From: Pristiophorus japonicus
Taxonomy: Eukaryota
Direction: 5' to 3'
DNA length: 64,000 nucleotides
NCBI RefSeq assembly: GCF_044704955.1
Contig: NC_091977.1
Coordinates: forward strand, 1,550,001 to 1,614,000
A program made the position numbers and the translations under genes. The notes below the pieces were generated by a model. That model made no database searches and was not told the origin of the DNA. It saw nothing but the letters and a program-made list of their open reading frames with translations. Within the stretch, counting starts at the first letter, position 1, and each line of letters starts with the position of its first letter. This document shows positions 3,097-43,052 of this stretch, in pieces.

Positions 3097-3184
3097 ATGA
3101 GTCAACGATTTGTCTGCAGCAAAATGTCAGCTGGTTTGATGTTCAGTTTCTGTGTGTTTCTCCTTCCGTCTGTTCTCACACACA
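3097..3184 (+). CDS. IgSF receptor exon 1: signal peptide MSQRFVCSKMSAGLMFSFCVFLLPSVLTH
   Basis: Acceptor tttcttacag ends at 3074, ATG is at 3097, and there is a hydrophobic core. A consensus phase-1 donor A|gtaagt is compatible with the D1 exon. Confidence 0.65.
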
Positions 3185-8364: not shown

Positions 8365-8706
8365 GAAACACCAATCATATTTATTTTTTAGATGAGAGAG
8401 CTGACATTCGATTAAAAGGACCAGACAATCCTGGGGATGGCCCTGTTGTCTGGGAATGGAAAGCACACTCAGGGCAAGTAATGCAGCAGCTGCTAACTTT
8501 TCACAAGAGGAGTTCGGGCCGGTGGGACGCACAATGGAATGATCAGACTGGAGATCAGGACTTGTACAGGAAAGTACGGCAGGATTCTGGTACCATCAAT
8601 CTGATAATTTACAATCCCACATTTAAACTTGCGGGATCATTCATCTTAACTCAAACACAGCCGAGTAATAAAACCCTGAAACTGTACGAACTATTTGGGA
8701 TCAAAG
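8365..8706 (+). CDS. IgSF receptor exon 2: D1, cysteine-free V-type Ig domain
   Basis: Splice sites tttccaacag|...aaag|gtgagt, phase 1-1, 342 nt open. Contains C-strand VVWEW and E-strand NLIIYNP. LKGP and AGSFILT sit where the B- and F-strand Cys motifs are expected. Confidence 0.85.
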
Positions 8707-10585: not shown

Positions 10586-10719
10586 GAGGGGTCACTAAGG
10601 GGTTTCGGAAACATAGAATGAGCCATTGATCTCCAACCACTAAATTGATTGTTAATATCAAACATCCATCTGCCGCCTGTGGTTGTATGGTGGCTATATA
10701 TCAGTTACAGATAGAGTAT

Positions 10720-11150: not shown

Positions 11151-11154
11151 ATCG

Positions 11155-12419: not shown

Positions 12420-12689
12420 TTGAGAGAAGTCCACAGAGAGCTGTGGTGGGCAGTGACGTTACACTCAGCTGTACCATCTCCAAACTCTCAGATACAGTCA
12501 GTCTTCAATGGAAACACAGAAACTCATCTCAGCAGGACAGGAGGAACACTGATCAGATCCGACTAAATAACACAGTCTATCTGATAGTCAGACACGTTGC
12601 AATAGAGGATCAGGAGTTGTACACGTGTGAAGTGCAGGAAAATGGATCCAGTATTCTCACAGGAAAAGCACATTTCTCTGTGTACCCCG
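12420..12689 (+). CDS. IgSF receptor exon 3: D2, C2-type Ig domain
   Basis: Splice sites ttttcacag|...cccg|gtaagt, phase 1-1, 270 nt. Reads GSDVTLSC...LQWK...YLIVRHV..EDQELYTCEV. Confidence 0.92.
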
Positions 12690-13114
12690 GTAAGTGCAGT
12701 TACCTCACAGTGGATATTAAAGAGTTACTAATATAAAACTGTTACATATAAAGTGGAACCATACATTACAACCATCAGCACCATGCCCACAGTCAGCATG
12801 TGGGGGCCTGGTGCACATATCAGCATTGAACACAAACTGGCCTCTCTCCCCTCAATGTCACTTCTAACCCAGTTCTGCTGCTATTGGAAGTGATTCCAGG
12901 CGCTGCATACTCTCAGCTTCAAATAAGCATTGAGCCAGGAGCAGGATTAAGGGAAGAGGGAAGGGCAGGGAATCAGTGGCCATGAACGGGAGAGGGAAGG
13001 ATGGAAATGTTGGGAATGTAGAGGAGAGATGGTGGGCAGGGGGAAACGACAAAGGCTGGGAGTGGGGCTTTGGGGGAGGGAGAGAGGAAAAGCTGGGAGT
13101 GGGGCTTTGGAACA

Positions 13115-13255
13115 GAAGATAAGAATGTGTATTTGTGTGAAGTGTAGAAAAAATACTCTTATTAAAATAGCATCAAAACTATTGATGTGGATCTGGGTAA
13201 GCCCAGAACTACCTTACAGTAGATATTAAAGAGTTACTGAAATAACACTGTTCCA
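13115..13255 (+). pseudogene. Relic duplicate of the 3' end of a D2-like exon plus its donor and intron start
   Basis: EDKNVYLCEV* aligns with EDQELYTCEVQ. ctgg|gtaagcccagaactaccttacagtagatattaaagagttact aligns with cccg|gtaagtgcagttacctcacagtggatattaaagagttact (12686-12730). Confidence 0.8.
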
Positions 13256-17570: not shown

Positions 17571-18000
17571 TTAGAAACATAGAAAATAGGTGCAGGAGTA
17601 GGCCATTCGGCCCTTCGAGCCTGCACCACCATTCAATATGATCATGGCTGATCATACAACTTCAGTACCCCATCCTGCTTTCTCTCCATACCCCTTGATC
17701 CCTTTAGTCGTAAGGGCCACACCTAACTCCCTTTTGAATATATCTAACGAACTGGCCTCAACAACTCTCTGCGGTAGAGAATTCCACAGGTTCACCACTC
17801 TCTGGGTGAAGAAGTTTCTCCTCATCTCGGTCCTAAATGGTTACCCCTTATCCTTAAACTATATCCCCTAATTCTAAACTTCCCCAACATTGGGAACATT
17901 CTTCCTGCATCTAACCTGTCCAGTCCTGTCAAAATTTTATATGTTTCTATGAGATCCCCCTCATTCTTTTAAATTCCAGTGAATATAAGCCTAGTTGATC
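17571..18000 (-). mobile_element. CR1 3' fragment nested in the Gypsy element
   Basis: An agaaacatagaaaataggtgcagg tail and ORF2 C-terminus. Confidence 0.9.
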
Positions 18001-18119
18001 CGATAAGATTACTGCACAAGAGATTACTCGAGAAGATTAAGGGGCGTGGAATTTGGAGGAGGATAGAAAACTGGATTAAAAGGAAGGTGAATAAAAAAGT
18101 AGGGGTTAAAGGCAGTTTA

Positions 18120-18600
18120 TTTTTATTTGTTCCCAATGATGTGGGCGTCGCTGGCAAGGCCGGCATTTATTGGCCATTCCTAATTGCCCTCAAAGGTGGT
18201 GGTGAGCTGCCTTCTTGAACCGCTGCAGTCCGTGTGGTGAAGGTGTTCCCACAGTGCTGTTGGGGAGGGAATTCCAGGATTTTGACCCAGCAATGATGAA
18301 GGAATGGCCGATATATTCCCATGTCGGGATGGTGTGTGACTGGGAGGGGAACGTGGAAGTGGTAGTGTTCCCATGCGCCTGCTGCCCTTATCCTTCTGGG
18401 AAGTAGAGGTCGCAGGTTTGGGAGGTGATTTTGGAGAAGCCTTGGCGAGTTTCTGCAGTGCATCTTGTAGATGGTACACACTGCAGCCACGGTGCGCCAG
18501 TGGTGGAGGGAGTGAATGTTTAACGTGGTGTATGGGGTGCCAATCAAGTGGGTGCTTTGTCCTGGATGGTGTCGAGCTTCTTGAGTGTTGTTGGAGCTGC
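18120..18600 (-). mobile_element. CR1/L2-group LINE 3' fragment nested in the Gypsy element
   Basis: IHSLHHWRTVAAVCTIYKMHC, with the same 3' tail as 7750-8070. Confidence 0.85.
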
Positions 18601-19129
18601 ATTGTTATGATTACTTCTTCATTAAGAAGGGAGAAGTGTAATAGAGCTCCACTTAGTGGACTACTGTGGTAATGCAACTTCTCATGCAAATTCAATACAA
18701 GCATCATGTGACAAGGTCACATAACAAGTTCCTGTCGAGCCATCTTGTGCATGTGTGTGTCTGTGATGTGGTAAGGCAGATATCACATTCACTATCACCT
18801 CTTTTACACTATCGCACAAGGCCAAATTACCCCCATGTTTTTGAAAGAAAGTATCGTGATTGCCCCTTGGACAATAAGGAAAGGTTTTCCAATTTTTCAA
18901 TCTTGTCAACTGCCAAGTTGTATTGCAAAAGCAATTAAAATGACTCTGGGTTAGTCTTGCTGAGAAAATGTGAAGGCTTTAGTGGAAATAGTGAAAGAAA
19001 TATCAGGAGAAAGAAAGAAAGTAACAAAGAAAGAATAGAAAAGGCACAGGTATAAAGTCTGTGCAGAATGTTCAATACAGAAGGAGACAGATGCTCACTG
19101 TGAATGAACCACTCCACTGAATACAAACT

Positions 19130-19360
19130 GAGTATCGTGAGCAGGTTATTGGTGAGTAAGGGCTGCTTGATAGCTCTGTTGACGACACCTTCCATCACTT
19201 TGCTGAAGATTGAGAGTAGACTGAAGGGGCGGTAATTGGCTGGATTGGATTTGTCCTGCTTTTTGATTGTAGGACATACCTGGGCAGTTTTCCACATTGT
19301 CGGGTAGATCCCAGTGTTGTAGCTGTACTGGGACAGCTTGGCGAGAGGCGTGGCTAGTTA
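19130..19360 (-). mobile_element. LINE RT fragment (same family as 6100-8070)
   Basis: WKTAQVCP..KKQDKSNPANYRPFSLLSIFSKVME. Confidence 0.8.
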
Positions 19361-19477
19361 TGATAATCAAAACACAAAATAGTTTTATATAATTTTTGCC
19401 AATAATTATTCTGGCTTTTCTCTCTACCTTAGAAACTGTAAAATTCTAACACGTTGTTCTCTGTCTCTCTATCACAG

Positions 19478-19819
19478 ATTTATATCAAGAGAGTTACACA
19501 CTTTATCGGTCAGGCACAGATCGCAGTGAACTCGACCTGATTTGCCGTTCTGTTGCCTCTACTTACAATGCTGCTGCATGGACCTGGAGCTCACATCATC
19601 TTCCAAATCAGGAGAAAAAAATAGCAACTGCTTCAAAATCTCAGCCTATCGATGTGAACAGGACCGACTTTGGGAGTCGACTGGTGCCCACAGTGGGACA
19701 TTTTAATGGCAGGACCTTCAGTGTGAGGATTGTCCCTGTACTGTTTGACGATGCAGGAGTTTACACATGTTCTCTGGGATCACGTAAATTTGTGACCATT
19801 AAACTAATCACAGTTAAAG
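19478..19819 (+). CDS. IgSF receptor exon 4: D3, V-type Ig domain
   Basis: Splice sites atcacag|...aaag|gtagga, phase 1-1, 342 nt. Reads ELDLIC...AAWTW...FGSRL...FSVRIVPVLFDDAGVYTC...IKLITVK. Confidence 0.92.
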
Positions 19820-19897
19820 GTAGGACACAGAATGTTGCTGGTGTTTTCAATGATAAAGTCATTGTGTAAAAGCTGAATGATTTTCCTGTTTCCACAG

Positions 19898-20167
19898 TCA
19901 CAGCTGAACCATCTGATGCAGAGACTGAGGGAGACACCGTTACCCCGACCTGCTCTGTGTCTGATGTCACTGAACCAATGAGACTGGTTTGGATCAATAG
20001 TGACGGCAGAACTGTTGGAGAGAAAACATTGAATGGACGGAATGGGGAAGAGAAATCATTGCGACTGATTATTCAGAAAGCTGACAGAGGCAGAGGGAAC
20101 TGGATATGTGCTGTGTTTTATCAAAACCGGCCCCAGGTTTTAGTCCCGTACTATCTGGAGCCCAGTG
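19898..20167 (+). CDS. IgSF receptor exon 5: D4, C2-type Ig domain with WxC F-strand
   Basis: Splice sites tttccacag|...agtg|gtaagt, phase 1-1, 270 nt, with a 78-nt intron upstream. Reads EGDTVTPTC...LVWIN...LRLIIQK...GNWICAV. Confidence 0.92.
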
Positions 20168-27310: not shown

Positions 27311-30300
27311 ATGGCCAACAGTGGATGCTGTGGGAAGGGAGGTCTGAAGAGGTAGTACAGTATGTGGTGGAGGAGGAGAGTTTGCAGGGGTCCAGCATGA
27401 ACCTGGAGTGTTGGGGATATTTGGTCACAGGGCGATGCCATGAAAAGGTCCAGAATGTGCTGCCCACCCTCTGGAGGGTAAGAAAGCCCACCTAAAGTTC
27501 TGGAGTTTTTCTCTGCCCTGGTACATAGACAGACTAGATACCTGTGGAAAAGCAAAAACATAGATGAGGTTGAAAAAGGCAGCTGGTTGTTTCCAAATAT
27601 AATGTTCCTTCCTTTTCCTAATCTACATGCTGCGTCTCGGTGACATCATGCACGGGGTCACTGCCCATGTGTTGAGGATATTGTGTATGGAGAAAGAGTC
27701 AGACTGAACACTGTGAGCTCAAAGTAAAGTGTGACCTTAGTCTTTTATTGCAGGTTTCCAGAGTGCCTCTCCAACCTGTGAAGCCTCCTTAAATACCTGT
27801 GCTCCCAAGGGATTGTGGGATCACTTAGGACTCCAGAGGATGAGCCCTCTGGTGGCTGTACAGCTTAATTACAAGTCCACATATAGAACAACACCCCCCC
27901 CGCAAAGTCAATAGTGTAACTATTTACAATGTGAGTCGATCTGGGGCCTTTCTTGCCCTGGTTGATCATCTCGGTGTGAAAGCTGGTGTTGCTGAATCAT
28001 TTGTTGGGCCCTCGCTGGGCTGCTGTACAGCTGGCCTTGCTGGGCTGCCTGGTGTGTTGGACCCTGCTGGGCTGCTGTACAGCTGGCCTTGCTGGTCTGC
28101 CTGGTGTGTTGGGCCCTCGCTGGGCTGCTGTGCAGCTGGCCTTGCTGGGCTGCCTGGTGTGTTGGACCCTGCTGGGCTGCTGTGCAGCTGGCCTTGCTGG
28201 GCTGCTGTGGATGATGGGTTCTGCTTCGTGGTCAACCGTGGTGCCGGTTGCCACTGGTGTGTATGTTGGAGGATCAAAAAAGGTAGGGTCCAAGGTGGGT
28301 TGCTCAGGATAGTCTGCGAATCTGAGTTTGATTTGGTCCAAGTGTTTCCGGTGAATGAGTCCATTTGAAAGTTTGACCCGAAACACCCTGATCCCCTCTT
28401 TGGCCACGACAGTGCCAGGAAGCCACTTGGGACTTTGTCCATAATTTAATACAAATACAGCATCATTGATTTCAATCTCGCCTGACACATTTGCACTATC
28501 ATGGTGTGCACTTTGTTGAAGCCGCCTGCTCTCCACCTGTTCATGTAGATCAGGGTGAACTAACGAGAGCCTTGTCTTAGGTGCTCTTTTCATGAGCATT
28601 TCAGCAGGTGGGATCCCAGTGAGTGAGTGGGGTCTCGTGCGGTAGCTAAGCAGGACTCGGGATAGGCGAGTCTGCAGTGAGCCTTCAGTTACCCTCTTCA
28701 AGCCTTGCTTGATGGTTTGCAATGCTCTCTCTGCCTGACCATTGGACGCTGGTTTAAACGGGACAGATGTGACATGTTTGATCCCGTTACAGGTCATGAA
28801 TTCTTTGAACTCAGCACTGGTAAAACATGGCCCGTTGCCACTCACCAGGACATCAGGTAAGCCGTGAGTGGCAAACATGGCCCACAGGGTTTCAGTAGTG
28901 GCAGCGGACGTGCTAGTCAACATTATCTCACATTCAATCCACTTGGAGTACGCGTCAACAACCACAAGAAACATTTTACCCAAGAACGGGCCTGCATAGT
29001 CGACGTGTAGCCTCGACCACGGTTTGGAGGGCCAAGAGTATAAACTGAGCTGCGCCTCTCTGGGTACATTGCTTAACTGCGAGCATGTATTACATCTGTG
29101 AACGCAGGACTCTAAGTCCATATTGATACCGGGCCACCACACATGGGATCTGGCTATCGCTTTCATCATTCTGATGCCTGGGTGGGTACTGTGGAGGTCA
29201 TTGATGAAAGTGTCTCTGCCCTTCTTGGGGACCACAACTCGATTGCCCCACAGAAGGCAGTCTGCCTGTGTAGACATTTCATCTTTGCGCTGCTGGAATG
29301 GCTTTATCTCTTCCTGCATTTCCACTGGGACACTGGACCAGCTCCCGTAAAGCGCACAGCTTTTGACTAGAGATAATAACGGGTCCTGGTTTGAACAGGT
29401 TTTGATCTGTCAGGCAGTGACAGGTGATTGCTCACTCTCAAATGTTTCCATAACCATGGCTAGATCTGTGGGCTGCACCATTTCCACCCCCGTGGTGGGC
29501 AATGGCAGCCTACTGAGAAACATAGAAACATAGAAAATAGGTGCAGGAGTAGGCCATTCGGCCCTTCTAGCCTGCACCGCCATTCAATGAGTTCATGGCT
29601 GAACATGCAACTTCAGTACCCCATTCCTGCTTTCTCGCCATACCCCTTGATCCCCCGAGTAGTAAGGATTTCATCTAACTCCTTTTTGAATATATTTAGT
29701 GAATTGGCCTCAACAACTTTCTGTGGTAGAGAATTCCATAGGTTCTCCACTCTCTGCGTGAAGAAGTTTCTCCTCATCTCAGTCCTAAATGGCTTACCCC
29801 TTATCCTTAGACTGTGTCCCCTGGTTCTGGACTTCCCCAACATTGGGAACATTCTTCCTGCATCTAACCTGTCTAAACCCATCAGAATTTTAAACGTTTC
29901 TATGAGGTCCCCTCTCATTCTTCTGAACTCCAGTGAATATAAGCCCAGTTGATCCAGTCTTTCTTGATAGGTCAGTCCCGCCATCCCGGGAATCAGTCTG
30001 GTGAACCTTCGCTGCACTCCCTCAACAGCAAGAATGTCCTTCCTCTAGTTAGGAGACCAAAACTGTACACAATACTCCAGGTGTGGCCTCACCAAGGCCC
30101 TGTACAACTGTAGCAACACCTCCCTGCCCCTGTACTCAAAGCCCCTCGCTATGAAGGCCAACATGCCATTTGCTTTCTTAACCGCCTGCTGTACCTGCAT
30201 GCCAACCTTCAATGACTGATGTACCATGACACCCAGGTCTAGTTGCACCTCCCCTTTTCCTAATCTGTCACCATTCAGATAATAGTCTGTCTCTCTGTTT

Positions 30301-32587
30301 TTACTATCAAAGTGGATAACCTCACATTTATCCACATTATACTTCATCTGCCATGCATTTGCCCACTCACCTAACCTATCCAAGTCGCTCTGCAGCCTCA
30401 CAGCATCCTCCTCGCAGCTCACACTGCCACCCAACTTAGTGTCATCCGCAAATTTGGAGATACTACATTTAATCCCCTCATCTAAATCATTAATGTACAG
30501 TGTAAACAGCTGGGGCCCCAGCACAGAACCTTGCGGCACCCCACTAGTCACTGCCTGCCATTCTGAAAAGTACCCATTTACTCCTACTCTTTGCTTCCTG
30601 TCTGACAACCAGTTCTCAATCCATGTCAGCACACTACCCCCAATCCCATGTGCTTTAACTTTGCACATTAATCTCTTGTGTGGGACCTTGTCGAAAGCCT
30701 TCTGAAAGTCCAAATATACCACATCAACTGGTTCTCCCTTGTCCACTCTACTGGAAACATCCTCAAAAAATTCCAGAAGATTTGTCAAGCATGATTTCCC
30801 TTTCACAAATCCATGCTGACTTGGACCTATCATGTCACCTCTTTCCAAATGTGCTGCTATGACATCCTTAATAATTGATTCCGTCATTTTACCCATGACT
30901 GAGGTCAGGCTGACCGGTCTATAATTCCCTGCTTTCTCTCTCCCTCCTTTTTTAAAAAGTGGGGTTACATTGGCTACCCTCCACTCTACAGGAACTGATC
31001 CAGAGTCAATGGAATGTTGGAAAATGACTGTCAATGCATCCACTATTTCCAAGGCCACCTCCTTAAGTACTCTGGGATGCAGTCCATCAGGCCCTGGGGA
31101 TTTATCGGCCTTCAATCCCATCAATTTCCCCAACACAATTTCCCGACTAATAAGGATTTCCCTCAGTTCCTCCTCCTTACTAGACCCTCTGACCCCTTTT
31201 ATATCCGGAAGGTTGTTTGTGTCCTCCTTAGTGAATACCGAACCAAAGTACTTGTTCAATTGGTCTGCCATTTCTTTGTTCCCCGTTATGACTTCCCCTG
31301 ATTCTGACTGCAGGGGACCTACGTTTGTCTTTACTAACCTTTTTCTTTTTACATATCTATAGAAACTTTTGCAATCGTTTTAATGTTTCCTGCAAGCTTC
31401 TTCTCGTACTCCATTTTCCCTGCCCTAATCAAACCCTTTGTCCTCCTCTGCTGAGTTCTAAATTTCTCCCAGTCCCCGGGATCGTTGCTATTTCTGCCCA
31501 ATTTGTATGCCACTTCCTTGGCTTTAATACTATCCCTGATTTCCCTTGATAGCCACGGTTGAGCCACCTTCCCTTTTTTATTTTTACGCCAGACAGGAAT
31601 GTAAAATTGTTGTAGTTCATCCATGCAGTCTCTAAATGTCTGCCATTGCCCATCCACAGTCAACCCCTTAAGTATCATTCGCCAATCTATCCTAGCCAAT
31701 TCATGCCTCATACCTTCAAAGTTAGCCTTCTTTAAGTTCTGGACCATAGTCTCTGAATTAACTGTTTCATTCTCCATCCTAATGCAGAATTCCACCATAT
31801 TATGGTCACTCTTCCCCAAAGGGCCTCGCACAATGCGATTGCTAATTAATCCTCTCTCATGACACAACACCCAGTCTAAGATGGCCTCCCCCCTAGTTGG
31901 TTTCTCGACATATTGGTCTAGAAAACCATCCCTTATGCACTCCAGGAAATCCTCCTCCACCGTATTGCTTCCAGTTTGGTTAGCCCAATCTATGTGCATA
32001 TTAAAGTCACCCATTATAACTGCTGCACCTTTATTGCATGCACCCCTAATTTCCTGTTTGATGCCCTCCCCAACATCACTACTACTGTTTGGAGGTCTGT
32101 ACACAACTCCCACTAACGTCTTTTGCCCTTTGGTGTTCTGCAGCTCTACCCATATAGATTCCACATCATCCAAGCTAATGTCCTTCCTAACTATTGCATT
32201 AATCTCCTCTTTAACCAGCAATGCTACTCCACCTCCTTTTCCTTTTATTCTATCTTCCTGAATGTTGAATACCCCTGGATGTTGAGTTCCCAGCCCTGAA
32301 CATCCTGGAGCCACGTCTCTGTAATCCCAATCACATCATATTTGTTAACATCTATTTGCACAGTTAATTCATCCACCTTATTATGGATACTCCTTGCATT
32401 AAGACACAAAGCCTTCAGGCTTGTTTTTTTAACACCCTTTGTCCTTTTAGAATTTTGCTGTACAGTGGCCCTTTTTGCCTTGGGTTTCTCTGCCCTCCAC
32501 TTTTCCTCATCTCCTTTCTGTCTTTTGCTTTTGTCTCCTTTTTGTTTCCCTCTGTCTCCCTGCATTGGTTCCCATCCCCTTGCCATA

Positions 32588-33535
32588 TTAGTTTAACTCC
32601 TCCCCAACAGCACTAGCAAACACTCCCCCTAGGACATTGGTTCCGGTCCTGCCCAGGTGTAGACCGTCCGGTTTGTACTGGTCCCACCTCCCCCAGAACC
32701 GGTTCCAATGCCCCAGGAATTTGAATCCCTCCCTGCTGTACCACTGCTCAAGCCACGTATTCATCTGTGCTATCCTGCGATTCCTACTCTGGCTAGCACG
32801 TGGCACTGGTAGCAATCCTGAGATTACTACTTTTGAGGTTCTACTTTTTAATTTAGCTCCTAGCTCCTTAAATTCGTTTCGTAGGACCTCATCCCTTTTT
32901 TTTCCTATGTCGTTGGTACCAATGTGCACCACGACAACTGGCTGTTCTCCCTCCCTTTTTAGAATGTCCTGCACCCGCTCCGAGACATCCTTGACCCTTG
33001 CACCAGGAAGGCAACATACCATCCTGGAGTCTCGGTTGCGGCCGCAGAAACACCTATCTATTCCCCTTACAATTGAATCCCCTATCACTATTGCTCTCCC
33101 ACTCTTTTTCCTGCCCTCCTGTGCAGCAGAGCCAGCCACGGTGCCATGAACTTGGCTGCTGCTGCCCTCCCCTGATGAGTCATCCCCCTCAACAGTACTC
33201 AAAGCAGTGTATCTGTTTTGCAGGGGGACGACCGCAGGGGACCCCTGCACTACCTTCCTTGCACTACTCTTCCTGCTGGTCTTCCATTCCCTATCTGGCT
33301 GTGGACCCTTCTCCTGCGGTAAGACCAACTCGCTGCACGTGCTACTCACGTCATTCTCAGCATCGTGGATGCTCCAGAGTGAATCCACCCTCAGCTCCAA
33401 TTCCGCAACGCGGTCTGTCAGGAGCTGGAGGCGGATACACTTCCCGCAGATGTAGTCGTCAGGGACACTGGAAATATCCCTGAGTTCCCACATGGTACAG
33501 GAGGAGCATATCACGTGACCGAGCTCTCCTGCCAT
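32588..33535 (-). CDS. CR1 ORF1p: zinc finger/leucine zipper plus SGNH esterase, 315 aa
   Basis: CxxC...CxxC, a coiled coil, then GDS, GTND and DGLH blocks; uninterrupted. Confidence 0.9.
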   Translation of the reverse strand: MAGELGHVICSSCTMWELRDISSVPDDYICGKCIRLQLLTDRVAELELRVDSLWSIHDAENDVSSTCSELVLPQEKGPQPDREWKTSRKSSARKVVQGSPAVVPLQNRYTALSTVEGDDSSGEGSSSQVHGTVAGSAAQEGRKKSGRAIVIGDSIVRGIDRCFCGRNRDSRMVCCLPGARVKDVSERVQDILKREGEQPVVVVHIGTNDIGKKRDEVLRNEFKELGAKLKSRTSKVVISGLLPVPRASQSRNRRIAQMNTWLEQWYSREGFKFLGHWNRFWGRWDQYKPDGLHLGRTGTNVLGGVFASAVGEELN

Positions 33536-33719
33536 GAATTAACCCTTAGATACACTTAAATTGGTGACAACACTGTTACAGGTTACTTCCTGAAATAAAA
33601 AAGAAAAAGAAAAACTACTCACCAATCACCAGCCAATCACTTACCCCTTTGGCTGTGACGTCACCTTTTGATTCCTTTCTACTTCTTTTCTGCTTTTTCT
33701 CCCGGCTGGAGGTGCACAA

Positions 33720-34245
33720 ACCCCGCCTTTATAGGCCTCACCTCGACTCCCACCGACTGCCTGTGGAACACCCGCTGGGCCTTTATAGGCCTCACCTCGA
33801 CTCCCGCCTCTCACCGACTGCCTGTGGAACACCCGCTGGGCCTTTATAGGCCTCACCTCGACTCCCGCCTCTCACCGACTGCCTGTGGAACACCCGCTGG
33901 GCCTTTATAGGCCTCACCTCGACTCCCACCTCTCACCGACTGCCTGTGGAACACCCGCTGGGCCTTTATAGGCCTCACCTCGAGCTCCCGCCTCTCACCG
34001 ACTGCCTGTGGAACACCCGCTGGGCCTTTATAGGCCTCACCTCGACTCCCGCCTCTCACCGACTGCCTGTGGAACACCCGCTGGGCCTTTATAGGCCTCA
34101 CCTCGACTCCCACCGACTGCCTGTGGAACACCCGCTGGGCCTTTATAGGCCTCACCTCGACTCCCGCCTCTCACCGACTGCCTGTGGAACACCCGCTGGG
34201 CCTTTATAGGCCTCACCACGCTGCTCCCGCCTCTCACCGACTGCT
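33720..34245 (-). repeat. CR1 5' UTR tandem monomers, ~61 bp (some shorter), about 9 copies, each with TATAAA on the minus strand
   Basis: Unit ctttataggcctcacctcgactcccgcctctcaccgactgcctgtggaacacccgctgggc. Confidence 0.9.
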
Positions 34246-34364
34246 GCTCGGCGCAGTTTTCTGTGCCTGGCCTGTGGCGGATGGCGTAGTTGTATGCGGA
34301 CAACGCGAGCGCCCATCTCTGGATGCGGGCCGATGCATTGGTATTTATCGCTTTACTCTTGGAA

Positions 34365-35833
34365 AATGGAAAGCAGCGAATGTAACGCCTCTGTTTAAAA
34401 AAGGGGGCAGACAAAAGGCAGGTAACTATAGGCCGGTTAGTTTAACATCTGTAGTGGGGAAAATGCTTGAAGCTATCATTAAGGAAGAAATAGCGGGACA
34501 TCTAGATAGGAATAGTGCAATCAAGCAGATACAACATGCAAAGGGGAAATCATGTTCAACTAATTTACTGGAATTCTTTGAGGATATAACGAGCATGGTG
34601 GATAGAGGTGTACTGATGGATGTGGTGTATTTAGATTTCCAAAAGGCATTCGATAAGGTGCCACACAAAAGGTTACTGCAGAAGATAAAAGTACGCAGAG
34701 TCAGAGGAAATGTATTAGCATGGATAGAGAATTGGCTGGCTGACAGAAAGCAGAGAGTCGGGATAAATGGGTCCTTTTCAGGTTGGAAATCGGTGGTTAG
34801 TGGTGTGCCACAGGGATCGGTGCTGGGACCACAACTGTTTACAATATACATAGATGACCTGGAAGAGGGGACAGAGTGTAGTGTGACAAAATTTGCAGAT
34901 GACACAAAGATTAGTGGGAAAGCGGGTTGTGTAGAGGACACAGAGAGGCTGCAAAGAGATTTAGATAGGTTAAGCGAATGGGCTAAGGTTTGGCAGATGG
35001 AATACAATGTCGGAAAATGTGAGGTCATCCACCTTGGCAAAAAAAACAGGAAAAGGGAATATTATTTGAATGGGGAGAAATTACAACATGCTGCGATGCA
35101 GAGGGACCTGGGGATCCTTGTGCATGAATCCCAAAAAGTTAGTTTGCAGGTGCAGCAGGTAATCAGGAAGGCGAATGGAATGTTGGCCTTCATTGCGAGA
35201 GGGATGGAGTACAAAAGCAGGGAGGTTCTGCTGCAACTGTACAGGGTATTGGTGAGGCCGCACCTGGAGTACTGCGAGCAGTTTTGGTCACCTTACTTAA
35301 GGAAGGATATACTAGCTTTGGAGGGGGTACAGAGACGATTCACGAGGCTGATTCCAGAGATGAGGGGGTTACCTTATGATGATAGATTGAGTAGACTGGG
35401 TCTTTACTTGTTGGAGTTCAGAAGGATGAGGGGTGATCTTTCAGAAACATTTAAAATAATGAAAGGGATCGACAAGATTGAGGCAGAGAGGTTGTTTCCA
35501 CTGGTCGGGGAGACTAGAACTAGGGGGCACAGCCTCAAAATACGGGGGAGCCAATTTAAAACCGAGTTGAGAAGGAATTTCTTCTCCCAGAGGGTTGTGA
35601 ATCTGTGGAATTCTCTGCCCAAGGAGCAGTTGAGCCTAGCTCATTGAATGTATTCAAGTCACAGATAGATAGATTTTTAACCAATAAGGGAATTAAGGGT
35701 TACGGGGAGCGGGCGGGTAAGTGGAGCTGAGTCCACGGCCAGATCAGCCATGATCTTGTTGAATGGTGGAGCAGGCTCGAGGGGCTAGATGGCCTACTCC
35801 TGTTCCTAATTCTTATGTTCTTATGTTCTTATG
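34365..35833 (+). mobile_element. 5'-truncated CR1 LINE (RT and 3' UTR)
   Basis: [23 protein letters not shown] and a (ttcttatg)n tail; near-identical to 59200-60667. Confidence 0.95.
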
Positions 35834-36123: not shown

Positions 36124-36579
36124 TCCATAGATAAACATTGCAAGAACACACGGAACTTTAAAAACACGCATGATCGGACTGGTAGATATGAACAGTTCCA
36201 ACAAAATTGCACCTTGTTACCGTGGGTGTTTTTTAGTGATGCCAGTTCCAGATCTGGGTCTGTCTGACACCTTGATGGTTAACGTCTACATCCAGTTGAT
36301 GCCCGTTAATTCGCTCCCTTTTCCCTCAGAGCTGCTCACTTTAATTTAAAGCTATTGCACCCACAATAATCTGATGAAAATAGTCAAATCCAGACACATA
36401 AAATGGGACAAAAAGAAGACGTGGACTTGGTCTTGGTGGAAATATTTGGCCCTCTGGCTCCCAGTGTTTAAAGCTGAATGTTTTCACTTTCCACATCTTT
36501 TATAGAATGACTGACAGGAGTATTTAAATATTCAACGAGATGGAGAGTGAAACTGAAACTCTAACTTTGTCCTTCACAG

Positions 36580-36689
36580 TGAGAGTGAGACCACTTCCGA
36601 CCATTTGGATGGTCACAGTTTCGGGCTACTTGTTGGTTAAACTGGGCATTGCTGTCGGACTCATTTCCTGCTTGAAGAGGATGAACAGA
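36580..36689 (+). CDS. IgSF receptor exon 6: transmembrane segment with a central Lys
   Basis: Splice sites ccttcacag|...aga|gtaaga, phase 1-0. Reads VRVRPLPTIWMVTVSGYLLVKLGIAVGLISCLKRMNR: a hydrophobic helix followed by a basic stop-transfer. Confidence 0.82.
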
Positions 36690-37844
36690 GTAAGAATTTC
36701 TTTAAGCTTTCCAGTAAATCAGGAATTAGTGCCGAGCTGTCACTTGACACGGATAAACTGATGTTCTTTGAACAGATATTATGTCACAAACTGTATTTTT
36801 AAATGTTATTTAAATATTGTACATTGTACTGAATTTAAAGAATCATTGATTGGCACATTTAAAGAAAGCAATTGTTCCAAATTCGCTAAATTCTTACAGC
36901 TTTGAATGTTTTTCCTGATTCAAACAGCACTAACTTCCCTGCTGCCACTTTCCACCAGGCTCTGAGGAAGGAATCAGGGAGATCTCGGAGGGCCATAGCT
37001 GGACAATGATTGGACAATGCTCAAACTAGGGGCCCAATCTTTGACTATTTTTCATTTACTGTCACAAGTATTCCTCTTGGAAATTAGTAACTTGAAAGTT
37101 ATCAGGAACCAATAGTTGAACAGTTAAAGCACGACCTGTAAAAATTAAGATGAACTCAAAATACAAATGCTTGTTTGGCAATGAGTTTGATCATTTTAAC
37201 GTTGCTGTTATTCCTGTTGCTGTGGCCTGGTGGCGCCAGAGAGCTGCAGGAGTGTTGGGGCAGAGAAATGAATTTGTCGCTCTGTAAACACTTCCTCTGT
37301 GGTAGGTTTGGTTCACCTGATTTACTCACGGTCAAATCTCAGTCCATTCAAAAGGAAAGTTTCTGTTTGGGAGAGCTCAGTTGGGGTAGTGTTCGAGGAA
37401 GGAGTGTTTCAGGGCTGTGTGCGAGGAATTGTAGAATGGGAACTGTTGGGGTGAGAGGCACAGCAATGTGGTAACTAGTGGAAGGTTTGAACTTACATGA
37501 AGGATGTGAGGTAACCTGTATTGTTCAGGATGTTTACATAGAATTCACAGAGAGAAACAGGCCATTCGGCCCAGCTGGTCCATGTCGGGGTTTATGCTCC
37601 ACACGAGCCACCTCCCACCCAATCGACACCTCCTTCTATTCCTTTCTCCCTCGTGTACTTATCTAGCCTCCCCTAAATTTAATCTATACTATTCACCCCA
37701 ACCTCTGTGTGTGTGTGTGAGCTCCAGCCTGGAATGTCAGAGAGATCTCTGAGAGCCGTACCTGATTATCAGTGAATAAAATTAAAACGGAAAATCAAAG
37801 GAGATTGCTCACATTGAGTCCAATATTCTAGAATTCAAATTATT

Positions 37845-40800
37845 GTCATGGTGCATATAGGTACCAAGAATATAGGTAAAAAACGGGATGAGATCCTACG
37901 AGACGAATTTAGGGAGCTCGGAGCTAAATTAGAAAGTAGGACCTCAAAAGTAGTAATCTCAGGATAACTAATCACGTGCTTGTCAGAGTAGGAATCGCAG
38001 GATAGCTCAGATGAATACGTGGCTTGAGGAGTGGTGCACAAGGGAGGGATTCAAATTCCTGGGACATTGGAACCAGTTCTGGGGGAGGTGGGACCAGTAC
38101 AAACCGGACTGTCTGCACCTGGGCAAGACCGGAACCAATGTCCCAGGGGGAGTGTTTGCTAGTGCTGTTGGGGAGGAGTTAAACTAATATGGCAGGGGGA
38201 TGGGAACCTATGTAGGGAGACAGAGGGAACTAGAATGGGGGCAGAAGCAAAAGATAGAAAGGAGAATTGTAAAAGTGGAGGGCAGGGAAACCTAAGGCAA
38301 AAAGCAAAAAGGGCCACATTACACCAAAATTCTAAAGGGGCAAAGTGTGTTAAAAAGACAAGCCTGAAGGCTCTGTGCCTCAATGCGAGGAGTATTCGGA
38401 ATAAGGTGGACGAATTAACTGCGCAGATAGTAGTTAACGGTAATGATGTCATTGGCATCACGGAGACATGGCTCCAGGGTGACCAAGGCTGGGAACTCAA
38501 CATCCAGGGGTATGCAACATTTAGGAAGGATAGACAGAAAGGAAAAGGAGGCGGGGTGGCAATGCTGGTTAAAGAGGAAATTAATGCAATTGTAAGGAAG
38601 GACATTAGCCTGGATGATGTGGAATCGGTATGGGTGGAGCTACGGAATACCAAAGGTCAGAAAATGCTAGTGGGAGTTGTGTGCAGACCACCAAACAGTA
38701 GTAGTGAGGTTGGGGACAGCATCAAACAAGAAATTAGGGATGTATGCAATAAAGGTACAGCAGTTATCATGGGCGACTTTAATCTACATATTGATTGAGC
38801 TAACCAAACTGGTAGCAATGCGGTGGAGGAGGATTTCCTGGAGTGTATTAGGGATGGTTCTCTAGACCAATATCTCGAGGAACCAACGAGGGAGATGGCC
38901 ATCCCAGACTGGGTGATGTGTAATGAGAAAGGACTAATTAGCAATCTTGTTGTGCGAGGCCCCTTGGGGAAAAGTGACCATAATATGGTAGAATTCTTTA
39001 CTAAGATGGAGAGTGACAAAGTTAATTCAGAAACTAAGGTCCTGAACTTAAGGAAAGGTAACTTCGATGGTTTGAGGCGTGAATTGGCTAGAATAGACTG
39101 GCAAATGATATGGTGGATAGTCAGTGGCAAACATTTAAAGATCACATGGATGAACTCCAGCAATTGTACATCCCTGTCTGGAGTAAAAATAAAAAGAGGA
39201 CGGTTGCTCAACTGTGGCTAACAAGAGAAATTAATGATAATGTTAAATCCAAGGAAGAGGTATATAAATTGGCCAGGAAAAGCAACAAACCTGAGGACTG
39301 GGAGAAATTTAGAATTCAGCAGAGGAGAACAAAGGATTTAATTAGGAGGGGGAAAATAGAATGTGAGAAGAAGCTTGCCGAGAACATAAAAACTGACTGC
39401 AAAAGCTTCTGTAGATATGTGAAGAGAAAAAGATTAGTGAAGACAAATGTAGGTCCCTTGCAGTCATAATCAGGTGAATTTATAATGGAGAACAAAGAAA
39501 TGGCAGACCAAGTCAACAAATCGGTTCTGTCTTCACTAAGGAAGACACAAATAACCTTCCGGAAATACTAGGGGACCGAGGGTCTAGTGAGAAGGAGGAA
39601 CTGAAGGAAATCCTTATTAGGCGGGAAATTGTGTTAGGGAAATTGATGGGATTGAAGGCCGATAAATCCCCAGGGCCTGATAGTCTGCATCCCAGAGTAC
39701 TTAAGGAAGTGGCCCTAGAAATAGTGGATACATTGGAGATCATTTTCCAACAGTCTATCGACTCTGGATCAGTTCCTATGGACTGGAGGGTAACTAATGT
39801 AACACCACTTTTTAAAAAGGGAGGGAGAGAGAAAGCGGGTAATTATAGACCGGTTAGCCTGACATCAGTAGTGGGGAAAATGTTGGAATCAATTATTAAG
39901 GATGAAATAGCAACGCATTTGGAAAGCAGTGACCGGATCCGCCCAAGTCAGCATGGATTTATGAAAGGGAAATCATGCTTGACAAATCTTCTGGAATTTT
40001 TAGAGGATATAACTAGTAGAGTGGACAAGGGAGAACCAGTGGATGTGGTGTATTTGGACTTTCAAAAGGCTTTTGACAAGGTCCCACACAAGAGATTGGT
40101 GTGCAAAATTAAAGCACATGGTATTGTGGGTAATGTACTAACGTGGATAGAGAACTGATTGGCAGGTAGGAAGCAGAGAGTCGGGATAAACGGGTCCTTT
40201 TCAGAATGGCAGACAGTGACTAGTGGAGTGCCGCAGGGCTCAGTGCTGGGACCCCAGCTCTTTCCAATATACATCAATGATTTGGATGAAGGAATTGAGT
40301 GTAATATCTCCAAGTTTGCACATGACACTAAGCTGGGTGGCGGTGTGAGCTGTGAGGAGGACGCTAAGAGGCTGCAGGGTGACTTGGACAGGTCAGGTGA
40401 GTGGGCAAATGCATGGCAGATGCAGTATAATGTGGATAAATGTGAGGTTATCCACTTTGGGGGCAAAAACGCGAAGACAGAATATTATCTGAATGGTGAC
40501 AGACTAGGAAAAGGGGAGGTGCAATGAGACCTGGGTGTCATGGTTCATCAGTCATTGAAAATTGGCATACAGGTACAGCAGGCGGTGAAGAAGGCAAATG
40601 GTATGTTGGCCTTCATAGCTAGGGGATTTGAGTATAGGAGCAGGGAGGTCTTACTGCAGTTGTACAGGGCCTTGGTGAGGCCTCACCTGGAATATTGTGT
40701 TCAGTTTTGGTCTCCTAATCTGAGGAAGGATGTTCTTGCTATTGAGGCAGTGCAGCGAAAGTTCACCAGACTGATTCCTGGGATGGCAGGACTGACAAAT

Positions 40801-41252
40801 GAGGAGAGACTGGATCAACTGGGCCTTTATACATTGGAGTTTAGAAGGATGAGAGGGGATCTCATAGAAACATATAAAATTCTGACAGGACTGGACAGGT
40901 TAGATGCAGGAAGAATGTTTCCGATGTTGGGGAAGTCCAGAACCAGGGGACACCGTCTTAGGATAAGGGGTAGGCCATTTAGGACTGAGATGAGGAGGAA
41001 CTTCTTCACTCAGAGAGTTGTTAACCTGTGGGATTCCCTGCCGCAGAGACTCATTGAGACCAGTTCATTGGATATATTCAAGAGGAAGTTAGATATGGCC
41101 CTTACGGCTAAAGGGATCAAGGGGTATGGAGAGAAAGCAGGAAAGGGGTACTGAGGGAATGATCAGCCATGATCTTATTGAATGGCGGTGCAGGCTCGAA
41201 GGGCTGAATGGCCTACTCCTGCACCTATTTTCTATGTTCATGTTTCTATGTT
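37845..41252 (+). mobile_element. 5'-truncated degenerate CR1 LINE (end of ORF1 plus ORF2)
   Basis: Same family as 29517-34245, with several stops and frameshifts and a ttctatgt tail. Confidence 0.95.
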
Positions 41253-41898
41253 CATTTAATTTACTATCAAACATATTCCTCTTTGATATTGGAAGTTAAT
41301 GACTTCCATGTTGCCAGAAACCAATATTATTTGAAAAGTAAGATTAAAAATGACAATAAATTGAACAGTATGACTGATTTTGTGAAAATGAATGATTCTG
41401 ATAAACGTCACAGCAGATCACAGCTCAGGGAGGTAACAAAAGAGACAGGATCAGTAGCTTCAGGAGGAGACCATTGTTGTGTCAGAAGCAGAGTTATAAG
41501 TTCAACGAGGTAACTTTACTGGTGAGGTCAGTCAACCACAGGGAGAACCTCTTAGAAATGTGGTCACACTATGGCCATGACCTTTAACCTCAAAAGTATA
41601 AACTTATTTTACATTCATATATTCATAGTGGGAAAAATCTTCCACAATATCTTCTCTCAGTAACTGGAGTTAGTTTATCGTTTTAATCAGGTCTACTTCT
41701 TCCAATGACTGAACCTTTAATTGTTGAAATTATCTCAGTAACACTGAGCCAGTGATGTGTGGGCCATGTTCTGTTCTGTTCCCCATTCTGTAAAATTACT
41801 CCTCTATTCAACTTCCTCTTTATCCATCACTTCCAGTCCACTGTTTATTCTTGAAGCATAAACTCTTTATTTAAAGCACATTTCTTGTCTTTTGTCAG

Positions 41899-42012
41899 AT
41901 ATCGCACAGCGGGAGCCCACACAAGGCGACAGGAAATGAAACAGATGATGCACCAGAAGCTATCGCATTACAGACCCTGAACTCTGACCCTGATCTGGAG
42001 ACCATAGAATGA
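41899..42012 (+). CDS. IgSF receptor exon 7: cytoplasmic tail ISHSGSPHKATGNETDDAPEAIALQTLNSDPDLETIE*
   Basis: Strong acceptor tttcttgtcttttgtcag; open in phase 0, matching the TM exon; hydrophilic; TGA at 42010-42012. Confidence 0.65.
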   Translation: MSHSGSPHKATGNETDDAPEAIALQTLNSDPDLETIE

Positions 42013-42042
42013 CTGGTACAGCATAGAAGGAGGCCATTCAGC

Positions 42043-43052
42043 CAGGGCCGGATTAACCCATTGGCTAAGAAGGCCCTCATTTTTTAGGCCCTCGACTTTA
42101 GACCCTCATTTTTATACCATTAACCCTAAATCTTTATCACAAGGTTGGCGAAGCAATATCATATATAACTGCATAATTATATCTTCAGAGGTGCAAAATA
42201 TTGTGTCCTTATGGCTCAAAGTGTGTTTAAAATTCTGTGACAATCTGGAAACATGTTTAAATATCCAAAAATGATTCACCCAGAGAGTTATGTGCACTGT
42301 TCACAGGACCAGTGCTATAATATCAGGTCTGATCATTGTGAATCCTTACAAAAGGATGAAGTATTTTCATTTATCTTTTGAAAGTGGAAATGTAGACGAC
42401 AAAGTCAAATGTGAAAAGTATTTAGTCGAGTAAGTATGTCCTCATAGATACCCCTCGATATCCCCCATAGATACCCCTCGATATCCCCCATAGATACCCC
42501 TAGATATCCCCCATAGATACCCCTAGATATCCCCCATAGATACTCCTAGATATCCCTCATAGATACCCCTAGATATCCCTCATAGATACCCCTAGATATC
42601 CCTCATAGATACCCCTAGATATCCCCCATAGATACCCCTAGATATCCCTCATAGATACCCCTAGATATCCCCCATAGATACCCCTAGATATCCCTCATAG
42701 ATACCCCTAGATATCCCCCATAGATACCCCTAGATATCCCTCATAGATACCCCTAGATATCCCCCATAGATACCCCTAGATATCCCTCATAGATACCCCT
42801 AGATATCCCCCATAGATACTCCCAGATATCCCCCATAGATACCCCTAGATATCCCCTATAGATACCCCTAGATATCCCCCATAGATACCCCTAGATATCC
42901 CCCATAGATACCCCTAGATATCCCCCATAGATACCCCTCGATATCCCCCATAGATACCCCTAGATATCCCCCATAGATACCAATATATAGTACATATATA
43001 GGCCCTTCCCTCCTATTAACCTTAGGCCCCACACAGCCTTAATCCAGCCCTG
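42043..43052. mobile_element. Non-autonomous hAT transposon
   Basis: TIRs cagggccggattaa / ttaatccagccctg (1 mismatch). Perfect 8-bp TSD cattcagc at 42035-42042 and 43053-43060. Confidence 0.92.
42443..42980. repeat. Minisatellite, 23-bp unit, inside the hAT element
   Basis: Unit catagatacccctagatatcccc, about 23 copies. Confidence 0.95.

What the first reader, a model, noticed from the sequence alone, without database searches (positions are those of the whole stretch)
36580..36689. Lysine in the middle of the TM helix predicts coupling to an ITAM adaptor (DAP12-type)
Seen: the TM reads IWMVTVSGYLLV-K-LGIAVGLISCL, then KRMNR, then a 37-aa tail without tyrosine. Known: a central TM Lys plus a short motif-less tail is the signature of activating receptors that pair with the acidic TM of DAP12/TYROBP (KIR2DS, TREMs, NKp44, SIRP-beta1). 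Canonical CD4 and LAG-3 TMs are uncharged. Inference: a CD4-like ectodomain is wired to NK/myeloid-style signalling, possibly as the activating arm of a paired-receptor system.
Basis: partly seen in the sequence, partly recalled or inferred. Interest (0 to 1): 0.85.

Follow-up and report, generated by a model that had tools for sequence, protein, structure and literature searches.

The report
Shark activating receptor with membrane lysine
This exon is the real, expressed membrane anchor of a shark four-Ig receptor. Its buried lysine is invariant across sharks and rays and marks the activating half of a large, unnamed activating/inhibitory receptor family with a CD4/LAG-3-like outer part.

Summary
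Window 36580-36689 is a phase-1 exon with AG and GTAAGA splice sites. It encodes a 24-residue hydrophobic helix with Lys at position 13, then KRMNR. RNA contigs join it exactly (36689->41899, GT..AG) to a single tail exon of 37 residues without tyrosine.

A public model from Pristiophorus japonicus (P0002, "uncharacterized protein") shows the same D4-TM-tail chain. The Lys is invariant in 26 of 26 distinct homologous membrane segments from about 15 shark and ray species, and it sits at the centre of the most conserved helix face.

The same species has a counterpart (P0084) that is 97% identical through all four Ig domains. P0084 instead has an uncharged membrane segment and two ITIMs.

The ectodomain model matches four-domain CD4 and LAG-3 best among solved structures. 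It lacks the CD4 and LAG-3 tail motifs and the D2 WxC motif, so it is a separate family. Ray-finned fishes have relatives, all unnamed in databases.

Two points remain open. Coupling to a DAP12-type adaptor is inferred, and no shark adaptor could be examined. The tail is not motif-less, because a LQTLNSD-type motif is conserved.

The scan had noted similar genes elsewhere in this genome (s1-878153, s1-877216).

The parts
3097..3184 (+). Leader exon (ATG at 3097, signal peptide, ends in phase 1, donor GTAAGT at 3185)
   Evidence: tblastn of P0002 residues 1-36; sequence and translation
8365..8706 (+). D1 exon: V-like domain without cysteines, phase 1-1
   Evidence: Sequence and splice sites; 103-107 of 113 residues identical to P0002/P0062; W59 and W61 conserved in the family
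12420..12689 (+). D2 exon: Ig domain with the canonical C..W..YxC pattern (no WxC), phase 1-1
   Evidence: Pfam Ig_3/I-set on the matching part of P0002
19478..19819 (+). D3 exon: V-set domain, phase 1-1
   Evidence: 113/113 identical to P0062
19898..20167 (+). D4 exon: C2-like domain with the WxC motif (NWIC), ends in phase 1. A second acceptor 6 nt downstream is the one used in model P0002.
   Evidence: aligned to the WxC regions of LAG-3 D2 and D4
36580..36689 (+). Stalk and transmembrane exon (the finding). Hydrophobic helix at 36603-36674, then KRMNR.
   Evidence: RNA joint 36689->41899; helix 443-474 in the model of P0002
36639..36641 (+). AAA codon of the membrane-embedded lysine (K456 of P0002)
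   Evidence: invariant in 26/26 distinct homologous TM segments
41899..42012 (+). Single cytoplasmic exon: 37 residues, no Tyr, conserved ...ALQTLNSDPDL..., stop TGA at 42010-12
   Evidence: spliced to the TM exon in RNA contigs
42013..42430 (+). 3' untranslated region (at least this far)
   Evidence: RNA contigs cover 41924-42180 and 42217-42430, the latter with 0 mismatches (table 8)

Best explanation
The exon anchors a type I, four-Ig-domain receptor that is the activating member of a paired activating/inhibitory family. This is a sawshark-type genome; the closest public proteins are from Pristiophorus japonicus.

Shown: the exon is real, spliced and expressed. The lysine sits in the middle of the membrane helix, on its most conserved face. 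It has been kept in every activating-type member in sharks and rays. Near-identical ectodomains are also found on inhibitory members with an uncharged membrane segment and two ITIMs.

Inferred: the buried lysine cannot stay unpaired in the bilayer. It most likely docks onto the acidic residue pair of a disulfide-linked signalling adaptor dimer, most likely DAP12/TYROBP-like because of the mid-membrane Lys. That adaptor would be needed for surface expression and would pass ligand binding on through its ITAM to Syk/ZAP-70-type kinases. The ITIM-bearing twin would recruit phosphatases in opposition. The short tyrosine-free tail carries a conserved LQTLNSD-type motif whose role is unknown.
For: The exon anatomy and phase match with D4 are.

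RNA contigs join 36689 to 41899 (GT..AG), and unique intron sequence has depth 0.

Public model P0002 has the same D4-TM-tail chain.

The K-type TM occurs in at least 26 distinct sequences from Pristiophorus, Heptranchias, Scyliorhinus, Heterodontus, Chiloscyllium, Pristis, Hypanus, Mobula, Rhinoraja, Leucoraja, Amblyraja and Hemitrygon. All have short tails (3-51 aa) and no ITIM.

K13, Y9, L10, L14 and G19 are invariant, and the conserved helix face is centred on K (permutation p 0.043).

P0084 from the same species is identical at 422 of 435 residues through leader to D4. It then switches to a neutral TM plus IHYGSI and VIYAQI. The window holds no ITIM-type TM or tail exon, so these are separate genes.

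In the D3-D4 tree, K and ITIM types pair by species in five lineages. This is expected for paired receptors whose ectodomains are homogenised while the signalling modules stay old.

About 30 neutral-TM members all carry the two ITIMs.

From general knowledge (Lanier; Feng, Call and Wucherpfennig): a central TM Lys plus a short tail is the signature of DAP12-associated receptors. FcR-gamma partners usually have an Arg near the outer leaflet.
Against: No adaptor was examined. I could not bring a shark DAP12, DAP10, FcR-gamma or CD3-zeta sequence into the session, and no paper in the library reports DAP12 in cartilaginous fish.

Akula et al. 2014 (PMC4016189) found no FcR-gamma in the shark data of that time, so the adaptor set of sharks is uncertain.

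The conserved tail motif is unusual for DAP12-coupled receptors, which suggests the tail may do something itself.

The D4->TM splice was not seen directly in reads.

The cell type that expresses the gene is unknown.
Confidence: 0.65

Rival explanations
1. The same activating logic holds, but the partner is not DAP12-like. It could be an FcR-gamma/CD3-zeta-type chain, a DAP10-like YxxM chain, or an adaptor peculiar to cartilaginous fish.
For: The adaptor identity was not tested. CD3-zeta is known in sharks (my recollection of Pettinello et al. 2017, not checked here). Catfish LITRs with a TM Lys use FcR-gamma-type chains (recollection). The bony-fish relatives of this family use a different charged TM, with Arg near the outer leaflet (eels, Conger, salmonids). 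The family is therefore not tied to one adaptor type.
Against: Receptors that pair with FcR-gamma or CD3-zeta usually carry Arg in the outer third of the helix. Here the residue is a Lys at position 13 of 24. FcR-gamma was not found in sharks in 2014.
Confidence: 0.2
2. The lysine does not recruit an ITAM adaptor. It may limit surface expression (a decoy or ligand sink for the inhibitory twin), or the conserved tyrosine-free tail motif may signal on its own.
For: The tail stretch TGNE...EAVALQTLNSDxDL is conserved between sharks and skates. This is not expected if the tail were idle.
Against: Five TM positions including the Lys are invariant, with helical periodicity, over roughly the shark-ray divergence. 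This points to a specific helix-helix partner. In all well-studied paired families, the charged-TM member signals through an adaptor.
Confidence: 0.1
3. The lysine mediates assembly with another receptor chain in the membrane, for example its inhibitory twin or a TCR/CD3-like complex, in a co-receptor role like that of CD4.
For: The ectodomain has a CD4/LAG-3-like fold.
Against: The inhibitory twin's TM has no acidic residue. There is no LCK-binding Cx(C/H) motif. The multigene, species-paired pattern is that of innate paired receptors, not of a single-copy co-receptor.
Confidence: 0.04
4. The exon is a chance open frame or part of a dead gene.
For: The exon lies 16 kb from D4, in sequence full of LINE and LTR elements.
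Against: It has canonical splice sites and an RNA joint to the tail exon. Its product is identical in public protein models. All seven exons are intact.
Confidence: 0.01

Closest known systems
DAP12-associated activating members of paired Ig receptor families (KIR2DS/KIR2DL, SIRP-beta1/SIRP-alpha, PILR-beta/alpha, TREM, NKp44; in fish NITR and LITR)
   Same: It is a type I Ig receptor with a Lys in the middle of the TM and a short tail without ITIM or ITAM. It has a near-identical inhibitory counterpart with two ITIMs. The family is multigene, with ectodomains that pair by species.
   Different: The ectodomain is a four-domain V-C2-V-C2 rod pair of CD4/LAG-3 type, not KIR/LILR C2 domains or single V domains. 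The tail carries a conserved Tyr-free motif. Adaptor binding is untested.
CD4 / LAG-3 family (Takizawa et al. 2023, PMC10768021)
   Same: It has four Ig domains V-C2-V-C2, and strands run through both V-to-C2 junctions in the model. Four-domain CD4 and LAG-3 are the best structural matches: Foldseek ranks 1-8, and VIA Z 16-18 for CD4. LAG-3 is the best profile hit in the PDB (E 4.6e-12). D4 has the WxC motif. D1 is encoded by one exon, as in shark CD4 and LAG-3. The tail is encoded by one exon, as in LAG-3.
   Different: It has no Cx(C/H) LCK motif and no (F/Y)xxL(D/E) motif. D2 has YxC instead of WxC. The TM is charged. The family is multigene with ITIM-bearing members, and public annotation never names them CD4 or LAG-3. 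Generic IgSF proteins such as CEA and NCAM score almost as well by sequence.
Teleost G6f-like (G6fL), a four-Ig thrombocyte collagen receptor related to CD4/LAG-3 (Ohashi 2010; Hughes et al. 2012, PMC3528668)
   Same: It has four Ig-like domains and a single TM. YxN motifs are present in the tails of the inhibitory-type shark members and of many ray-finned-fish relatives.
   Different: G6fL carries its own ITAM and is single-copy. No relative found here is named G6f-like, and none shows the YxN-plus-ITAM layout.

Membership tests
Adaptor-coupled activating receptor of a paired Ig receptor family (DAP12-type) | Basic residue in the central part of a single TM helix | tested here: met
   Lys at position 13 of 24; helix 443-474 with K456 in the model; invariant in 26/26
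Adaptor-coupled activating receptor of a paired Ig receptor family (DAP12-type) | Short cytoplasmic tail without ITIM, ITAM or any tyrosine | tested here: met
   The tail is KRMNR plus 37 residues with no Tyr. None of the K-type homologues has an ITIM. The tail does hold a conserved non-Tyr motif.
Adaptor-coupled activating receptor of a paired Ig receptor family (DAP12-type) | Closely related inhibitory counterpart with a neutral TM and ITIMs | tested here: met
   P0084 is 422/435 identical through D4, then has a neutral TM with IHYGSI and VIYAQI. K and ITIM types pair by species in five lineages.
Adaptor-coupled activating receptor of a paired Ig receptor family (DAP12-type) | Physical, Lys-dependent association with DAP12 (or another acidic-TM adaptor) | not testable with these tools
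   No shark adaptor sequence was available. Complex prediction accepts only session sequences or microbial Swiss-Prot references.
Adaptor-coupled activating receptor of a paired Ig receptor family (DAP12-type) | A DAP12/TYROBP ortholog exists and is co-expressed in the species | not tested
   No paper was found. A scan note (s1-874805) reports a split ITAM elsewhere in this genome; it is unchecked.
CD4/LAG-3 family | Four extracellular Ig domains V-C2-V-C2, with rod-like V-C2 pairs joined by a continuous strand | tested here: met
   Exon structure. Strands 132-147 and 336-350 cross the domain junctions. Model D3D4 fits CD4 D1D2 at rmsd 3.5 A over about 175 residues.
CD4/LAG-3 family | WxC motif in strand F of both D2 and D4 (PMC10768021) | tested here: not met
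   D4 has NWIC, but D2 has LYTC.
CD4/LAG-3 family | Tail motif Cx(C/H) (CD4) or (F/Y)xxL(D/E) (LAG-3) | tested here: not met
   Neither motif is in the 42-residue tail. The nearest stretch is ALQTLN.
CD4/LAG-3 family | Location in the conserved LAG-3-CD4 genomic neighbourhood | not testable with these tools
CD4/LAG-3 family | CD4 or LAG-3 is the top match in similarity searches | tested here: inconclusive
   They are best by structure and by PDB profile (LAG-3 E 4.6e-12). CEA at 1.2e-11 is close behind, and a single-sequence search is weak (E 0.01).

The most novel reading that the evidence does not exclude
This is one gene of an ancient, undescribed family of CD4/LAG-3-fold paired receptors. 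The inhibitory module, with the same two ITIMs, is shared by sharks and zebrafish. The activating module was invented separately: a mid-membrane Lys in sharks and rays, an outer-leaflet Arg in eels and salmonids. The family could be the long-sought germline NK/myeloid receptor system of cartilaginous fish. Given its fold it may sense MHC (class II-like) ligands. It would also date DAP12-type signalling to before the shark-ray split.
Probability: 0.3. Interest if true: 0.85.

Novelty: new variant of a known kind. Interest (0 to 1): 0.66.

Why it matters
Sharks are the oldest living animals with a human-type adaptive immune system, yet their innate activating/inhibitory receptor families are almost unknown. 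A 2014 survey found no KIR/LILR-like, FcR-like or FcR-gamma genes in them (PMC4016189).

This finding gives a concrete, expressed, conserved candidate system. Twin receptors share a CD4/LAG-3-like ectodomain and carry opposite signalling modules. That makes three questions directly testable:
- Which adaptor chains exist and work in sharks?
- What do these receptors bind (MHC class II is an obvious guess)?
- Was the CD4/LAG-3 fold first used by innate paired receptors?

About 200 public proteins of this family in cartilaginous and ray-finned fishes are currently labelled only "uncharacterized".

Tried and rejected
- **Pfam.** The TM exon gave nothing, and the whole protein gave only generic Ig families. 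No CD4-specific family matched.
- **Single-sequence PDB search.** Hits were too weak to classify: NCAM2 at 6e-4, LAG-3 at 0.01.
- **Region-restricted homology search on TM plus tail.** It found only 4 proteins because of the word filter. The K-type members were recovered from the full-length and D3-exon searches instead.
- **Alternative splicing of one gene as the source of both forms.** Rejected. tblastn finds no ITIM-type TM or tail exon in the window, even at E 50. The two ectodomains also differ at 13 residues.
- **The gene is CD4 or LAG-3 itself.** Rejected on the tail motifs, on D2, and on the multigene nature of the family.
- **The ray-finned-fish relatives are G6f-like.** Not supported. 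None of the 88 relatives of a cyprinid member carries that name or the YxN-plus-ITAM layout.
- **Literature.** Searches for shark DAP12/TYROBP, for a described elasmobranch paired Ig family, and for the ITIM strings all came back empty.
- **ESM Atlas.** It gave only generic Ig clusters; a LAG3 fragment cluster was at rank 4. I treat this as a lead only.
- **The look-up of encoding contigs.** Runs of consecutive LOC numbers in Hypanus, Mobula and Pristis hint at clusters.
- **Complex prediction.** Not used, because no adaptor sequence was available.
- **Joined window model.** I did not send a joined protein model of the window's exons to any tool. Exons were searched by reference, and the public protein P0002 served as proxy for the whole chain.

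Full report
**1. The observation**

The sequence at 36570-36700 reads ...tccttcacag | TG AGA GTG ... AAC AGA | gtaaga. The exon is therefore 36580-36689, with an AG acceptor and a near-consensus donor.

Its frame, with codons from 36582, gives three parts:
- a seven-residue stalk, RVRPLPT;
- a 24-residue hydrophobic run, IWMVTVSGYLLV-K-LGIAVGLISCL;
- the stop-transfer KRMNR.

The Lys codon is AAA at 36639-36641. Twelve hydrophobic residues precede it and eleven follow it.

**2. The gene around it**

Stop-free frames and splice sites on the + strand give a seven-exon gene:

| Exon | Coordinates |
|---|---|
| Leader | 3097-3184 |
| D1 | 8365-8706 |
| D2 | 12420-12689 |
| D3 | 19478-19819 |
| D4 | 19898-20167 |
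| TM | 36580-36689 |
| Tail | 41899-42012 |

All Ig exons are phase 1-1. D4 ends with a lone g that completes GTG (Val) with the first two bases of the TM exon.

The 16-kb and 5-kb introns are filled with LINE elements (endonuclease plus reverse transcriptase) and LTR-element integrase ORFs. tblastn with family proteins finds no second gene of the family in the window.

**3. Is it expressed and spliced as modelled?**

Three small runs from 2024 of one organism (X12-X14) hold 41-70% of the sampled words of the D3-D4 stretch. Laid on 36480-42430, they behave as RNA:
- Unique intron bins (36878-37474, 41256-41852) have depth 0.
- The TM-exon bin and the tail-exon bin are covered.
- X12 has a contig that joins 36689 to 41899 (skips 5209, GT..AG, depth 162).

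A second joint from 36689 carries 18 replaced letters that spell the start of the tail of paralog P0079. At least two K-type genes are therefore transcribed.

Contigs run on to at least 42430, which is 3' UTR.

It rests on four things: the phase match, the public model P0002, the same junction in the homologues of about 15 species, and the absence of any other TM exon in the intron.

**4. Relatives**

A phmmer search with the D3 exon against 1.84 billion representatives gave 61 hits. The best full-length hit is P0002, 509 aa, from Pristiophorus japonicus, named only "uncharacterized protein". It has the chain leader-D1-D2-D3-D4-TM(K)-tail.

The window's exons are a mosaic of P0002 and its sister P0062:
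- D3 and D4 are identical to P0062.
- D1 is nearer to P0002.
- The TM exon is identical to both.

The window is therefore a further allele or copy.

A full-length search gave 78 family members in all elasmobranch orders sampled and in Callorhinchus. Almost all are "uncharacterized".

**5. Two signalling types**

A scan of all fetched proteins sorts the members that have a TM into two classes.

- **K type.** The consensus is W-I-x-x-x-S-G-Y-L-(L/F)-V-K-L-x-V-A-x-G-L-I. Tails are 3-51 residues long and none has an ITIM. It occurs in Pristiophorus, Heptranchias, Scyliorhinus (two species), Heterodontus, Chiloscyllium, Pristis, Hypanus, Mobula (two species), Rhinoraja, Leucoraja, Amblyraja and Hemitrygon.
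- **I type.** The TM is uncharged and very hydrophobic. The tail is 80-155 residues long and always carries IHY(G/A)SI and VIYAQI, which are canonical ITIMs. Often a YSN motif is present as well.

In 26 distinct K-type TM segments, K13, Y9, L10, L14 and G19 never vary. Conservation has helical periodicity (permutation p 0.043). The Lys lies at the centre of the conserved face W2-Y9-K13-A17-L20-L24. This is what a specific helix-helix contact would leave behind.

**6. Paired receptors**

P0084 of the same species is identical to P0002 at 422 of 435 residues, from the leader to ...YYLEPS. It then continues with the I-type stalk, TM and ITIM tail. Nine of the 13 differences lie in D1-D2.

A maximum-likelihood tree of D3-D4 was built from 34 rows. 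Rows left out were fragments and fused multi-gene models. The tree interleaves the two types:
- K and I members pair by species in Pristiophorus, Heptranchias, Rhinoraja, Hypanus and Mobula, several with starred support.
- The label needs about 10 changes on the tree.

The TM and tail modules, by contrast, are each conserved across sharks and rays. So the signalling modules are old and the ectodomains are kept alike within a species. This is the pattern of KIR, SIRP, PILR and similar families.

**7. The ectodomain**

Pfam sees only generic Ig families.

A profile of 28 members has LAG-3 as its best PDB hit (E 4.6e-12). The D3-end/D4 part aligns to both the D1-D2 and the D3-D4 parts of LAG-3, including the WxC motif. 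CEA (1.2e-11) and NCAM are close behind, and CD4 scores 6e-9.

The AlphaFold2 model of P0002 has pLDDT 82 and pTM 0.73. Single strands run through both V-to-C2 junctions (132-147 and 336-350), and there is one TM helix at 443-474.

Structural comparison gave these results:
- Foldseek ranks 1-8 are all four-domain LAG-3 or CD4 (E 8e-17 to 5e-15).
- VIA-align gives four-domain CD4 Z 16.2-18.2 over 312-329 residues. The next family, JAML, scores 14.1.
- The model's D3D4 fits CD4 D1D2 at 3.5 A over about 175 residues.

The fold and domain plan are therefore CD4/LAG-3-like. Three defining sequence features of that family, as listed by Takizawa et al. 2023, are not met:
- WxC in D2;
- Cx(C/H) in the tail;
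- (F/Y)xxL(D/E) in the tail.

Public annotation never calls these proteins CD4 or LAG-3. I file it as a separate family with a CD4/LAG-3-like architecture.

**8. Beyond sharks**

Bichir, sturgeon, tarpon, eel, cyprinid (including zebrafish), catfish, characin, mormyrid, salmonid and Umbra proteins are homologous. All are unnamed.

Most have neutral TMs and the same two ITIMs as the shark I type: IHYASV and VIYSAI in zebrafish P0192. The inhibitory module therefore predates the split of cartilaginous and bony fishes.

Eels, Conger and salmonids also have short-tailed members with a different charged TM, carrying Arg near the outer leaflet and, in eels, a second Lys. Activating forms thus seem to have arisen more than once in this family.

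A scan note (s1-874789) pointed me to G6F. Teleost G6f-like is a four-Ig, CD4/LAG-3-related thrombocyte receptor with YxN and its own ITAM (PMC3528668). None of the relatives found carries that name or layout, and a direct comparison was not possible.

**9. The tail**

The stretch ...TGNE(T)DD...EAVALQTLNSD(P/T)DL... is shared by Pristiophorus, Heptranchias, Scyliorhinus, Amblyraja and Rhinoraja members.

The homologues end 2-7 residues after ...DL. Little if anything has therefore been cut off at the stop of the window's gene. This bears on the neighbouring note s1-876577.

VALQTL has the spacing of an ITIM with Leu in place of Tyr. Whether that means anything is unknown.

**10. Mechanism and its limits**

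Shown:
- a real, expressed TM exon;
- a mid-membrane Lys that is invariant and sits on a conserved face;
- a short Tyr-free tail;
- ITIM twins.

Inferred from established knowledge of KIR2DS, NKG2C, TREM, SIRP-beta and NKp44: the Lys pairs with the Asp pair of an adaptor dimer. The position and the residue type point to DAP12 rather than to FcR-gamma or CD3-zeta partners, whose receptors usually carry an outer-leaflet Arg.

Not shown: any adaptor. The library holds no report of DAP12 in cartilaginous fish.

My estimates are about 0.65 that it is an adaptor-coupled activating receptor with a DAP12-like partner, and about 0.2 that the partner is another acidic-TM chain.

**11. Novelty**

A paired activating receptor with a TM Lys is a known kind. 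A multigene paired family built on the CD4/LAG-3 four-domain plan, present from sharks to teleosts and unnamed in databases, appears undescribed in the papers I could search. Subscription journals are not covered. I therefore rate it a new variant of a known kind.

Noticed in passing
window 41899-42009: The tyrosine-free tail carries a stretch (TGNE..EAVALQTLNSDxDL) conserved between sharks and skates. VALQTL has ITIM spacing with Leu in place of Tyr. Homologues end within 2-7 residues of the window's stop, so the stop does not seem to have removed a longer tail.
   Followed up: partly
P0084 versus P0002 (Pristiophorus japonicus proteins; not in the window): The inhibitory twin is 97% identical through the four Ig domains. 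Nine of the 13 differences lie in D1-D2, the likely ligand-binding end.
   Followed up: partly
P0148, P0195, P0199, P0212, P0220, P0223 (eels, Conger, salmonids): Ray-finned-fish relatives have short-tailed members with a different charged TM (TETVVR..., Arg near the outer leaflet, plus a Lys in eels). Zebrafish and catfish members keep the same two ITIMs as sharks. Activating forms seem to have arisen independently.
   Followed up: partly
window 19896-19904: Two acceptors lie 6 nt apart at the start of D4. The public model P0002 uses the downstream one and so lacks the 'VT' that most family members have.
   Followed up: no
window 41997 and 42070: About half of the RNA contig depth in X12 lacks one base at 41997, which would shift the last five codons. 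All contigs at 42070 carry a 13-nt insertion relative to the window. These could be allele or paralog differences.
   Followed up: no
window 8365-20167 versus P0002/P0062: The window's gene is a mosaic. D3 and D4 are identical to P0062, and D1 is closer to P0002. This suggests recombination or conversion among near-identical K-type copies.
   Followed up: partly
window 42440-42980: A long tandem array with a unit of about 22 nt (CATAGATACCCCTAGATATCCC-like) lies just beyond the covered part of the 3' UTR.
   Followed up: no
window 4488-6063: Intron 1 holds two long tandem arrays that stay open in one frame (units like ...PTVRGCGSQWD... and ...GDTLLVNMREGMSQV...).
   Followed up: no
window 37900-41250, also 27997-35650 and 58874-60565: LINE (endonuclease plus reverse transcriptase) and LTR-integrase copies fill the introns. 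The LINE in the TM-tail intron has enormous contig depth in the RNA runs, so this element family is abundantly transcribed or multi-copy.
   Followed up: partly
same genome, 761 kb before the window (scan note s1-878153) and another piece (s1-877216): Other first-reader notes describe further CD4/LAG-3-like V-C2-V-C2 genes with activating architecture. This fits a dispersed or clustered multigene family in this genome.
   Followed up: no
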